DNA of 64,000 bases, taken from positions 6,882,001 through 6,946,000 of the forward strand of contig NW_026889806.1 of NCBI RefSeq assembly GCF_033153115.1, given 5' to 3'. Under the pieces are notes generated by a model. That model saw only the letters and a list, made by a program, of their open reading frames with translations. It ran no database searches and was not told the DNA's origin. Origin of the DNA: Saccostrea echinata. Lineage: Eukaryota. Numbering within the stretch: position 1 is the first letter of the stretch; the number at the start of each line of letters is the position of its first letter. Position numbers and translations under genes: made by a program. Shown in pieces: positions 52,001-55,000 of the stretch.

Positions 52001-55000
52001 AAAATGGGCTAAACACTAATTCAAGAAAAGTGAGGTCAAGGTCAAAGGAAAGGTCAAGGTCAAAAAATGTTGATGCAGTTGCATAGCTCTCATCAATATC
52101 TATCAGCATATGAAGTTTGATAAAAATATGTTGGATAGTTTCTTTGAAACTGAGCTTTGAACAGAGCTAAATGCAAAGTGTGACGGAAGGACAGACGGAA
52201 GGACGGAAGACGGACATGACAAACACTATATGCCCCGGCCATATTCATGGCGGGGCATACAAATTGCTATAAATTATCTTAATAAATAATTTGCAATTTC
52301 ATAATCATACTGGTTGAGTCATAGTTTTAATGACTTGTTTTTCTTATATAATAAACAAAGCATCAATATTGAAAATCAAAACAACAGGCAAGCATACATT
52401 GCACATAAAATGTTATCACTATATAAAGTACACATAGTTATACACTAGTTGCTGCCAATTTTTCCAACCTTGCCTCATCCATCTTTATAAAAAGGATGGC
52501 ATCAATAAATTAACCCTTTTTTTCTTTCATCAAACGTGAGAGTAATACTGTAACATGATGGTCTGGGTGTGCCTGTTCACTTTACCAACCTACAGAATCA
52601 TCAGACAACAGACAACAACACAGACAACACAGACAACCACAACATTGTCCTTACCTCATCAAACAGTTGTAAACCTCACCAACCTACTACACCATCACAC
52701 AACAACACAGACAACCAAAACATTCTGTCCTTACCTCATCAAACAGTTGTAACATGATGGTCAGAACGTCTGGGTGTGCCTTTTCCACCTCACCAACCTA
52801 CTACACCATCACACAACAACACAGACAACCAAAACATTCTGTCCTTACCTCATCAAACAGTTGTAGCATGATGGTCAGAACGTCTGGGTGTGCCTTTTCC
52901 ACCTCAACAACCTACAACACCATCAGACAACAGACAACAACGACAACCACAACACTCTGTCCTTACCTCATCAAACAATTGTAACATGATAGTCAGTACG
53001 TCTGGGTGTGCCTTTTCCACTTCATCAAACAGAACAACTGCCTGTGGACACTCTGTTAATTTCTTGGTGAGTTGTCCCCCGTCCTCGTGACCAACATATC
53101 CTGGGGGAGAGCCAATAAATTTAGCCACCTGAATAAAAGAGGATGACATTTAGTGCTTGCATCTTGATGCACAGAAGTAAAGGAAAAATATTTACAGATA
53201 AATGAACGTTCATACAGAAAATACATGTACATGCTCATAAATGAATCAATATGATAGTCCTACTTTTTCACCTAGTACTACAAAATGAAGAATAATTACC
53301 ACATTATAACAAATTACAGATAAATTTCAGCTACTAGTATATATGATGAATTGCAATTTCTCTGTTGAATGCCATACATAACCATCGAAAGGTGACTGTT
53401 CACTACAAAGCAAATATACTTTCCTTGTGTCATAGTTATTCATTACACATTCTTATACAGATTCAGTTAAAATGAACATTTTGAAAATTAGATTATCATC
53501 CCAAATGTTTGTGGGATAAAAAAAGGTCTGAGTCAAGGAGAAGTTTCTACTCACCTCATGTTTCTCCTGGTACTCTGACATATCAATTCTTATAAAGCCC
53601 TGAAAATTACACAGGTATATCTTACAGGATTCAATATTAATTAAAGTTAATCAAGAAAAACTCAAAATTCCACAATAAAAATGTTGCATATGGACAAAAA
53701 GAAGATTTTTTTTCAACCTTTTTGATGTCTTTATGAAGATACTTGGCGACCTGCTTGGCAAGCTCTGTTTTACCTACAGTGGATGAGAATGGAACTCTTT
53801 AGTTTGAGCTTCTACAATCCCCAAAAAACATATGGAAAAGTTTAGTGATTGTTTGACAGAGTATAAAGATAGGAAATGACCCATTTTAGAACAGATTAGA
53901 ATATTTCTGTACAATTACTCAAGGTACATTTATCTTATTAACCAAAGCTAAATTTAATGAATAATATTTGATTAAGATGAATTGAAACTTACCAATTCCA
54001 GAGGATCCCAGAAAACTTACCAATTCCAGAGATCCCAGAAAACTTACCAATGCCAGAAAAACCAGAAAACTTACCAATTCCAGAGGATCCCAGAAAACTT
54101 ACCAATGCCAGAAAAACCAGAAAACTTACCAATTCCAGAAGAACCAATAAAACTTACAATTCCACAGAAACTCAGAAAACTAACCAATTCCAGATAAACC
54201 CAGAAAACTTACCAATTCCAGAGTATCCCAGAAAACTTACCAACTCCAGAGGATCCCAGAAAACTTACCAACTCCAGAGGATCCCAGAAAACTTACCAAT
54301 TCCAGAGGATCCCAGAAAACTTACCAATGCCAGAAAAACCAGAAAACTTACCAATTCCAGAATAACCCAGAAAAACTTACAATTCCACAGAAACTCAGAA
54401 AACTAACCAATTCCAGAGGATACCAGAAAACTTACCAATTCCAGAGGATCCCAGAAAAAGAAAGACCAGGGGATGGTCTTCATCATACCAGCCATTCTCC
54501 TTACGTCTTATTGCTACAAAACAATAACAGAGATATATACAGTAGCCATTCTTCTTATGTCATATTGCTACAAAACAATAACAGAGATATATACAGTAGC
54601 CATTCTTCTTACGTCTTATTGCTACAAAACAATAACAGAGATATATACAGTAGCCATTCTTCTTACGTCTTATTGCTACAAAACAATAACAGAGATATAT
54701 ACAGTAGCCATTCTTCTTACGTCTTATTGCTACAAAACAATAACAGAGATATATACAGTAGCCATTCTTCTTACGTCTTATTGCTACAAAACAATAACAG
54801 AGATATATACAGTAGCCATTCTTCTTACGTCTTATTGCTACAAAACAATAACAGAGATATATACAGTAGCCATTCATCTTACGTCTTATTGCTACAAAAC
54901 AATAACAGAGATATATACAGTAGCCATTCTTCTTACGTCTTATTGCTACAAAACAATAACAGAGATATATACAGTAGCCATTCTTCTTACGTCTTATTGC

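What the first reader, a model, noticed from the sequence alone, without database searches (positions are those of the whole stretch)
52730..53030. Intronic echo copies differ from the exon only at synonymous positions (CLPB Walker-B exon)
Seen: the exon reads GAA GTG GAA AAG GCA CAC CCA GAC GTA CTG ACT ATC ATG TTA CAA TTG TTT GAT GAG|GT. The next intronic copy reads GAG...GTT...ACC...CTA...CTG. All 5 differences in 19 codons are synonymous, including two first-position Leu changes, and the third copy has 4 of 4. A neutral intronic copy should differ mostly at non-synonymous positions. Inference: the copies may have been coding recently (a displaced older or alternative allele of the exon end). 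Alternatively they are constrained because conversion or array collapse can swap them into the exon, or the exon's silent sites evolve unusually fast. The array could be a chronological archive of past exon alleles. Caveat: this is post hoc, and the CLPB arrays at 49912, 54436 and 54513 do show non-synonymous differences.
Basis: partly seen in the sequence, partly recalled or inferred. Interest (0 to 1): 0.85.

Follow-up and report, generated by a model that had tools for sequence, protein, structure and literature searches.

The report
Synonymous-only echo copies of CLPB exon
The end of an animal CLPB exon and its splice donor are repeated in tandem in the following intron, and the two nearest copies differ from the exon only at silent sites; other such arrays nearby decay like neutral DNA, so this is probably an ordinary junction minisatellite plus small numbers.

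Summary
On the minus strand, the last 57 nt of the CLPB Walker-B exon plus about 57 nt of intron form a 114-nt tandem array. Copy 2 differs from the exon at 5 sites and copy 3 at 4, all synonymous.

However, copies 2 and 3 differ from each other at only 1 of 114 nt, so they share four of those differences. The first difference lies at the unit boundary. Copies 4 and 5 are broken by deletions. Reading through the first donor meets a stop codon, so no copy is translated.

The nominal chance of the pattern is about 0.01-0.02, and it was picked post hoc.

I surveyed 17 junction arrays in 264 kb around the site:
- Variants arising inside intronic copies: 27% synonymous (32:86), as random mutation predicts.
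- The same in the two nearest copies: 28% (9:23).

General constraint on copies is therefore not supported. A residue remains: three arrays in this window have silent-only nearest copies (heterogeneity p 0.005, or 0.04 without this array). A recently displaced exon allele stays possible.

Reads and outgroup DNA could not be obtained. The scan's first readers had already noted silent-only echo copies twice in this genome.

The parts
52967..53128 (-). CLPB (Skd3) exon with the Walker-B motif, 54 codons, ending LFDE in phase 0. It is followed by the donor GAG|GTAAGG.
   Evidence: Translation. It matches human CLPB chains over residues 1-54 with E 4e-28. Open-frame fragments from many animals end at the same LFDE|GT position.
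52906..53023 (-). Unit 1 of the array, the authentic unit: exon tail 53023-52967 plus intron head 52966-52906 (61 nt). Reading through from the exon meets TGA at 52907-52905.
   Evidence: the open frame ends at 52904.
52792..52905 (-). Unit 2: tail copy 52905-52849 with 5 synonymous differences, an identical pseudo-donor GAG|GTAAGG at 52848-52847, and a 57-nt intron head.
52678..52791 (-). Unit 3: tail copy 52791-52735 with 4 synonymous differences, all shared with unit 2. The pseudo-donor is at 52734-52733. Unit 3 differs from unit 2 at 1 of 114 nt.
52584..52677 (-). Unit 4: the tail is cut down to 23 nt by a 34-nt deletion. The pseudo-donor at 52654-52653 is kept. The 71-nt intron head looks like a longer ancestral form of both other head types.
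52525..52583 (-). Unit 5: a decayed tail copy with a 1-nt deletion, an 8-nt deletion, a 10-nt insertion, non-synonymous changes and a lost donor GT.
   Evidence: Alignment.
50906..51073 (-). Open frame holding the next CLPB exon ([23 protein letters not shown]...). Its acceptor was not mapped. The intron that holds the array therefore runs from 52966 to about 51074.
   Evidence: Frame translation.

Best explanation
This is a junction minisatellite of the kind called 'mirage' in amphioxus. The last 57 nt of the CLPB Walker-B exon and the first ~57 nt of its intron were duplicated in tandem, by slippage or unequal exchange (inferred). Five units are now present.

Only unit 1 is expressed as exon. 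All donors are identical, and by analogy with other such arrays the first one is used (inferred). Use of any later donor would bring in a stop codon (shown).

The intronic copies are non-coding relics that evolve neutrally. Units 2 and 3 are a very recent duplicate of each other, and units 4 and 5 are already broken.

The silent-only differences reflect three things:
- The exon can change only at silent sites, so every change on its side is synonymous.
- There are few independent events: 4 shared and 1 private.
- The array was picked post hoc from a very large number of arrays.
For: Structure of the array (shown):
- Searches give the five units.
- Read-through from the exon meets TGA at 52907-52905.
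- Unit 4 has a 34-nt deletion. Unit 5 has indels and has lost its donor.
- Units 2 and 3 differ at 1 of 114 nt.

Local census of 17 junction arrays in 264 kb:
- Minority variants among copies are 32 S to 86 N (27%). In ranks 2-3 they are 9 S to 23 N (28%). The random expectation is 0.25-0.28.
- Exon versus rank 2, without this array, is 17 S to 22 N (44%), with no trend by rank.
- The exon-derived and intron-derived parts of units diverge equally, 0.07 against 0.07.
- Differences from the majority of copies are 10 S to 7 N without this array. This fits a mix of exon-side and copy-side changes.

Other points:
- The null for this sequence gives P 0.01-0.02. Nine of the 17 arrays have 3 or more rank-2 differences, so hundreds of all-silent arrays are expected by chance in 923 Mb.
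- In copies, G/C to A/T changes are 3.2 times as frequent per site as the reverse. At three sites the exon holds A/T where the copies hold G/C. The exon is thus the likelier changed partner.
- Literature: mirages and the human F7 array are spliced normally from the first site.
Against: - The nominal P of 0.01-0.02 is small.
- Rank-2 synonymous to non-synonymous counts are over-dispersed among arrays (Monte Carlo p 0.005; 0.041 without this array). Three arrays with long tails, all in this window, have silent-only nearest copies: 5:0, 3:0 and 3:0.
- In those three arrays, silent-site divergence is about 0.24 and non-synonymous divergence is 0, while the intron parts differ by about 0.1. A simple equal-time neutral tree does not predict this.
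- The direction of change is unresolved. Unit 5 agrees with the exon at two sites and with the copies at one.
- The sample is small (264 kb) and includes the window that drew attention. The independent 200-kb flank has only two arrays with 3 or more rank-2 differences.
Confidence: 0.55

Rival explanations
1. Displaced exon allele. Units 2 and 3 were the functional exon end of another haplotype until recently. Unequal exchange between haplotypes moved them into the intron, or recombination replaced the exon of this haplotype with a divergent allele. The differences are then allelic silent differences between two working exons.
For: - There are 0 non-synonymous and 0 indel differences in 2 x 57 nt, while the neighbouring intron heads carry 3 indel events.
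- The intron heads form an A-B-B-A' pattern. Units 2 and 3 look like an insertion between units 1 and 4.
- Silent-only nearest copies occur in three arrays within 52 kb. This could reflect one regional cause, such as two deep haplotypes.
- Amphioxus mirage haplotypes differ in unit number and show boundary units that escape homogenisation.
Against: - It needs silent-site divergence between alleles of about 0.2-0.3. From my own knowledge, that is above reported diversity for nearly all animals.
- No second haplotype of the locus is present in the assembly.
- The independent flank gives no support.
- It could not be tested, because no reads were available.
Confidence: 0.22
2. Constraint through array collapse. 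Unequal exchange between unit 1 and a nearby unit deletes the units between them and puts the copy's tail into the exon. A damaging change in a proximal copy then carries a fitness cost equal to the collapse rate. In a very large population such changes are purged, while silent differences build up.
For: - The silent-only copies are the nearest and most similar ones, and they sit in arrays with long units (59-114 nt).
- Selection acting through exchange among duplicates is an established theoretical theme (review abstract listed).
Against: - Copy-lineage variants in rank 2-3 copies of the other arrays are 28% synonymous, which is neutral.
- Rank-2 copies with stops and non-synonymous changes are common.
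- Tails diverge as fast as intron heads.
- Units 4 and 5 of this array are wrecked.
Confidence: 0.08
3. Assembly mosaic. The contig switches haplotype inside the minisatellite, or places the two haplotypes' junctions in tandem. The 'copy' is then the other allele's exon.
For: - Minisatellites are hard to assemble. The amphioxus globin paper reports a mirage that was aberrantly assembled in a genome draft.
- The pattern mimics allelic differences.
Against: - Units 4 and 5 and the many other arrays show that real tandem structure is pervasive.
- Units of 114 nt are far shorter than long reads.
- The same objection about very high allelic silent divergence applies.
Confidence: 0.07
4. Translated cassette. 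Each intron head begins GTAAGG and ends TAG|G. If these were spliced as roughly 52-55-nt mini-introns, units 2 and 3 would enter the mRNA in frame as 21-codon repeats, which would keep them under coding selection.
For: - Frames VVEVEK...LFDE and VGEVEK...LFDE are open directly after the TAG.
- The remaining 63 nt is a multiple of 3.
- There is a CTGAT branch-like motif in head 1.
Against: - A 21-residue insertion next to the Walker-B strand of an AAA+ core should be damaging (inference from the fold).
- The introns would be very short.
- The other two silent-only arrays have units of 59 and 80 nt, which cannot work this way.
- No RNA data were available.
Confidence: 0.03

Closest known systems
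Amphioxus 'mirage' minisatellites (Adh3, globin BflGb6 and BflGb9, troponin C, PGBD5)
   Same: Both are minisatellite-like tandem duplications that span an exon-intron boundary. Units carry copies of the splice signal. They occur at both donor and acceptor sides. Units are tens to about 160 nt long. Inner units are homogenised and boundary units diverge. Splicing is reported as normal.
   Different: The organism here is unidentified: a 923-Mb assembly with 36% G+C locally. No haplotype or RNA data were available. The papers I read report no synonymous versus non-synonymous analysis of mirage units.
Human F7 intron 7 37-bp VNTR
   Same: The first element spans the exon-intron boundary, so the authentic donor is followed by identical pseudo-donors. 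These stay silent because the most upstream site is selected.
   Different: F7 is a single well-studied locus with a 37-bp unit. Here the unit is 114 nt with a 57-nt coding tail, in a genome where such arrays are very common (141 arrays, 17% of 264 kb). Selection of the first site is inferred here, not shown.
Intron gain by tandem duplication across an AG|GT site (Rogers model)
   Same: A tandem duplication of a segment that holds splice signals creates alternative exon-like units (discussed; a potato example is listed).
   Different: No new intron is created here. The intron position after LFDE is old and shared across animals.
Gene and pseudogene pairs that exchange sequence by conversion
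   Same: A dead copy next to a live sequence can pass changes into it. In principle this places selection on the copy. This is the logic of the collapse-selection rival.
   Different: The units here are 114-nt intronic repeats, not gene-sized duplicates. The local data show neutral decay of copies.

Membership tests
Junction ('mirage'-type) minisatellite | Head-to-tail tandem repeats of a unit tens to hundreds of nt long | tested here: met
   TRF finds period 114, 3.1 copies, 93% matches. Five units were resolved by hand.
Junction ('mirage'-type) minisatellite | The unit spans an exon-intron boundary and carries the splice signal | tested here: met
   Each of units 1-4 has a tail followed by GAG|GTAAGG.
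Junction ('mirage'-type) minisatellite | The terminal unit is the authentic exon end of a real gene | tested here: met
   Unit 1 continues a 54-codon exon that matches human CLPB at E 4e-28. The intron position is shared across animals.
Junction ('mirage'-type) minisatellite | Normal splicing from the authentic site, with pseudo-sites silent | not testable with these tools
The sequence shows only that later donors would bring in a stop codon.
Junction ('mirage'-type) minisatellite | Length polymorphism between haplotypes | not testable with these tools
   There were no reads. The assembly holds one copy of the locus.
CLPB/Skd3 AAA+ disaggregase, Walker-B exon | Walker-B hhhhDE motif in a ClpB-type AAA_2 domain | tested here: met
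   The exon contains VVLFDE. It matches CLPB, ClpB, ClpC and Hsp104 chains. Homologous fragments carry PF07724.
Protein-coding sequence under purifying selection (claimed for the intronic copies) | The copies can be translated in the gene's frame | tested here: not met
   Read-through meets TGA at 52907-52905. The 61-nt head shifts the frame of unit 2.
Protein-coding sequence under purifying selection (claimed for the intronic copies) | A deficit of non-synonymous changes on the copies' own lineages | tested here: not met
   In the other arrays the counts are 32 S to 86 N overall and 9 S to 23 N in ranks 2-3, equal to random expectation. In this array only one private change exists, and it is synonymous.
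Protein-coding sequence under purifying selection (claimed for the intronic copies) | The exon-derived part of the unit is more conserved than the intron-derived part | tested here: not met
   Tail divergence is 0.074 and intron-head divergence 0.070 between units 1 and 2, pooled over 8 arrays. In this array it is 5/57 against 5/57 substitutions, though indels occur only in the intron head.

The most novel reading that the evidence does not exclude
In a subset of junction minisatellites with long units, the copy next to the exon has a coding history that reaches almost to the present. Either it is an exon allele recently pushed into the intron by unequal exchange between haplotypes, or it is kept translatable because array collapse recycles it into the exon. 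Such arrays would then act as a short-term store, and a possible source, of exon alleles.
Probability: 0.2. Interest if true: 0.7.

Novelty: new member of a known kind. Interest (0 to 1): 0.3.

Why it matters
If intronic echo copies were really kept translatable, junction minisatellites would be a new way for genomes to store and swap exon variants. They would also be a new case of selection acting on non-coding DNA through recombination.

The local evidence says that the copies in general decay neutrally. That makes this array a clear example of a mirage-type minisatellite in a conserved mitochondrial disaggregase gene.

Two points are useful beyond this locus:
- Copies freeze older exon states, so they can help to polarise silent substitutions.
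- This genome, where arrays fill about 17% of the 264 kb sampled, is a good place for a decisive genome-wide test.

Tried and rejected

After that unexplained decline I still sent the exon's open frame by reference to a protein search and other frames to a Pfam scan. I state this in case the decline concerned the nature of the sequence.
I therefore had no DNA of orthologous exons and no outgroup polarisation.
The intended 2-Mb census shrank to 264 kb.
Exons were handled one by one, by reference.

**Analyses abandoned or corrected**
- An automatic scan for acceptor arrays gave mostly noise. Only the known CLPB acceptor array was added, by hand.
- I first misread that acceptor array from memory of the human protein as rich in silent differences. 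The sequence shows one fixed non-synonymous difference and a stop in the nearest copy, and I corrected the count.
- Relaxing the donor and open-frame filters added mainly false exons, so I kept a curated list. Of 10 frames tested, 6 matched a fitting Pfam family at E 0.005 or better, though only three passed Pfam's own cut-off; a seventh had only a chance-level hit (E 0.09) and three had none.
- Using units 4 and 5 as in-array outgroups gave conflicting answers. They may also descend from the same founder copy, so polarity stays open.

**Readings rejected**
- Alternative use of later donors as a coding isoform is rejected because of the stop codon.

Full report
**What is there**

The window is G000:C57:6882001-6946000 of a 923-Mb animal assembly. 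Local G+C is 36%. A CLPB (Skd3) gene lies on the minus strand from about 61580 to 49065.

Its Walker-B exon is 53128-52967, 54 codons ending LFDE. It matches human CLPB chains end to end at E 4e-28. Open-frame fragments of the same exon from many animals stop at the same LFDE|GT junction, so the intron position is old.

The last 57 nt of the exon and the first ~57 nt of the intron form a tandem array. TRF gives period 114, 3.1 copies and 93% matches. By hand I resolve five units:

| Unit | Tail (window, minus strand) | State |
|---|---|---|
| 1 | 53023-52967 | Authentic exon end; donor GT at 52966-52965 |
| 2 | 52905-52849 | Intact tail; identical pseudo-donor |
| 3 | 52791-52735 | Intact tail; identical pseudo-donor |
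| 4 | 52677-52655 | 34-nt deletion; pseudo-donor kept |
| 5 | 52583 to about 52525 | 1-nt and 8-nt deletions, 10-nt insertion, non-synonymous changes, donor lost |

Units 1-4 all carry GAG|GTAAGG.

**The observation**

Copy 2 differs from the exon by GAA>GAG, GTA>GTT, ACT>ACC, TTA>CTA and TTG>CTG. Copy 3 has the same differences except TTA>CTA. Three qualifications apply.
- Units 2 and 3 differ from each other at one position in 114. There are five events, four shared and one private, not nine.
- The first codon lies at the unit boundary. A local alignment runs one codon further and there shows a non-synonymous mismatch.

**Can the copies be coding now?**

No. Reading through the first donor meets TGA at 52907-52905, and the 61-nt first intron head shifts the frame.

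One exotic route remains. Each intron head starts GTAAGG and ends TAG|G. If it were removed as a mini-intron of roughly 52-55 nt, it would leave 63-nt in-frame units. A 21-residue insertion beside the Walker-B strand is unlikely to be tolerated. The other silent-only arrays cannot work this way either.

**How unlikely is the pattern?**

- Random mutations in this tail are synonymous 20-30% of the time.
- The proper null is a neutral copy plus an exon that accepts only silent changes. With the local transition bias and G/C to A/T bias it gives 0.43-0.50.
- The pattern then has P of about 0.01-0.02.
- The intron heads of units 1 and 2 differ by 5 substitutions and 3 indel events in 57-61 nt. The tails differ by 5 substitutions and no indels.

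**Local census**

Only 200 kb of extra genome was granted. I therefore used the 264 kb that I held. It contains 141 tandem arrays of period 18 or more, covering 17% of the sequence.

With a script (TRF, a donor motif, an open frame reaching upstream of the array) and hand curation I kept 17 arrays that abut credible exons:
- 14 donor arrays;
- an array built from exon-internal sequence of CLPB;
- the CLPB acceptor array.

Of 10 frames tested, 6 matched a fitting Pfam family at E 0.005 or better (DCX, Pkinase and the USP38 N-terminal domain above Pfam's own cut-off; HLH, Aa_trans and LRR below it). One more had only a chance-level hit and three had none.

| Class of difference | Synonymous : non-synonymous | Fraction synonymous |
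|---|---|---|
| Variants held by a minority of copies (arose within the array) | 32 : 86 | 27% |
| Same, most proximal carrier at rank 2 or 3 | 9 : 23 | 28% |
| Random-mutation expectation | | 0.25-0.28 |
| Exon versus nearest copy, without this array | 17 : 22 | 44% |
| Exon versus majority of copies, without this array | 10 : 7 | 59% |
| Exon versus majority of copies, with this array | 14 : 7 | 67% |

By rank the fractions are 42, 45, 57, 38 and 39% for ranks 2, 3, 4, 5 and 6 or beyond (14 arrays excluding the focal one). There is no trend.

Between units 1 and 2, exon-derived and intron-derived parts diverge equally, 0.074 against 0.070.

The majority-of-copies class lies well above 27% (p 0.006 without this array). 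It is compatible with about 40-45% (p 0.09).

**Reading of the census**

- Intronic copies, including proximal ones, decay as neutral DNA.
- Differences that set the exon apart from its copies are enriched for silent changes, because part of them happened on the exon's side, where only silent changes survive.
- Nine of the 17 arrays have three or more rank-2 differences. All-silent arrays are therefore expected by the hundreds in 923 Mb by chance alone.

**What does not fit**

Rank-2 counts are over-dispersed among arrays. A Monte Carlo test gives p 0.005, or 0.041 without this array. The excess comes from three arrays with long tails, all inside this window:

| Array | Rank-2 S : N |
|---|---|
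| This array | 5 : 0 |
| SLC36 exon 1 (window 996-1530) | 3 : 0 |
| Next transporter exon (window 2196-2512) | 3 : 0 |

In the last of these, the rank-3 copy shares the same three silent differences but adds nine non-synonymous ones and an indel.

In these three arrays silent-site divergence is about 0.24 and non-synonymous divergence is 0. The intron parts differ by about 0.1. A simple equal-time tree does not predict this.

It holds only two arrays with three or more rank-2 differences. I therefore keep a real effect in a subset as a live minority possibility.

**Direction of change**

In copies, G/C to A/T changes are 3.2 times as frequent per site as the reverse. At three of the four shared sites the exon has A or T where the copies have G or C, which favours the exon as the changed partner.

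Unit 4 agrees with units 2 and 3. Unit 5 agrees with the exon at two sites and with the copies at one, in a poor alignment. All intronic units may also descend from one founder copy. Polarity is therefore unresolved without an outgroup.

**Mechanism**

Shown: the tandem structure, the identity of the donors, the stop on read-through, the decay of distal units, and the neutral spectrum of copy variants nearby.

Inferred:
- origin by slippage or unequal exchange;
- use of the first donor only, by analogy with the human F7 intron-7 array, where pseudo-sites are functional but silent because the most upstream site is chosen;
- normal splicing, by analogy with amphioxus mirages, which are spliced normally.

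**Comparison with the known**

The array meets the structural definition of a mirage-type junction minisatellite. Splicing behaviour and length polymorphism could not be tested. It is a new member of that kind, in CLPB, in an unidentified animal whose genome is very rich in such arrays. Earlier notes of this scan say the same, and one follow-up note relates them to a few human genes.

First readers of this scan had already noted silent-only copies twice in this genome: SLC36 exon 1 in this window and SMC1 on another piece. I checked the first and could not reach the second.

**Verdict**

General constraint on echo copies is not supported. The most likely reading is a neutral junction minisatellite with exon-side silent changes and small numbers (0.55). 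The rivals are a displaced allele (0.22), an assembly mosaic (0.07), collapse-mediated constraint (0.08) and a translated cassette (0.03).

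Noticed in passing
window 996-1530 (+): SLC36-like exon 1 is followed by about 8 units of 59 nt (48-nt exon tail plus donor). The nearest copy differs by 3 silent changes only: GGT>GGC, GAA>GAG and CCT>CCC. 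The next copies carry many non-synonymous changes. The site GGT/GGC/GGA has three states across the units.
   Followed up: yes
window 2196-2512 (+): An amino-acid transporter exon (weak Aa_trans match, E 2e-4, below Pfam's cut-off) has an 80-nt junction array. Rank 2 has 3 silent differences and no others. Rank 3 shares those 3 and adds 9 non-synonymous differences and an indel. Rank 4 has 6 S and 6 N.
   Followed up: yes
window 56511-57198 (-), exon segment 57261-57232: This 33-nt array of about 20 copies is built from exon-internal CLPB sequence ([10 protein letters not shown]) without the splice donor. It starts about 26 nt downstream of the real donor at 57221-57220. All copies share four fixed non-synonymous differences from the exon. 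Not every 'echo' array includes the junction itself.
   Followed up: partly
window 54490-55182 and 53985-54458 (-): The 78-nt Walker-A exon of CLPB is flanked by an acceptor array (54 nt, about 13 copies, 98% alike) and a donor array (28 nt, about 17 copies). The acceptor copies share one fixed non-synonymous change (GAG>AAG). The copy next to the exon has a TGA.
   Followed up: partly
L004-L023 plus the window (C57:6682001-6946000): There are 141 tandem arrays of period 18 or more, covering 17% of 264 kb. Many have CAGGTAA-like motifs in the unit. An MGA-like gene carries an array of about 4 kb of 38-nt units derived from the exon end ...LQHRLTGKPI|GTAAGT (C57:6773157-6777250).
   Followed up: partly
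window 51220-52144: The same CLPB intron holds 107-nt and 143-nt tandem repeats with internal (AGGTCA)n runs. They are unrelated to the junction array.
   Followed up: no
window 62882-63283 and 63523-63714 (-): These open frames look like a Tc1/mariner-type transposase (DDE region and N-terminal helix-turn-helix), just upstream of CLPB. This was judged by eye and not searched.
   Followed up: no
window 53023-52967 and 53038-53024 (-): The repeated tail is bounded by the two LFDE motifs of the protein: TGTTTGATGAAGT at its start and TGTTTGATGAGGT at its end. The ends of the intron heads (GGTTGTTGAG or GGTTGGTGAG) partly resemble the exon sequence upstream of the tail. Microhomology may have set the breakpoints of the duplication.
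   Followed up: partly
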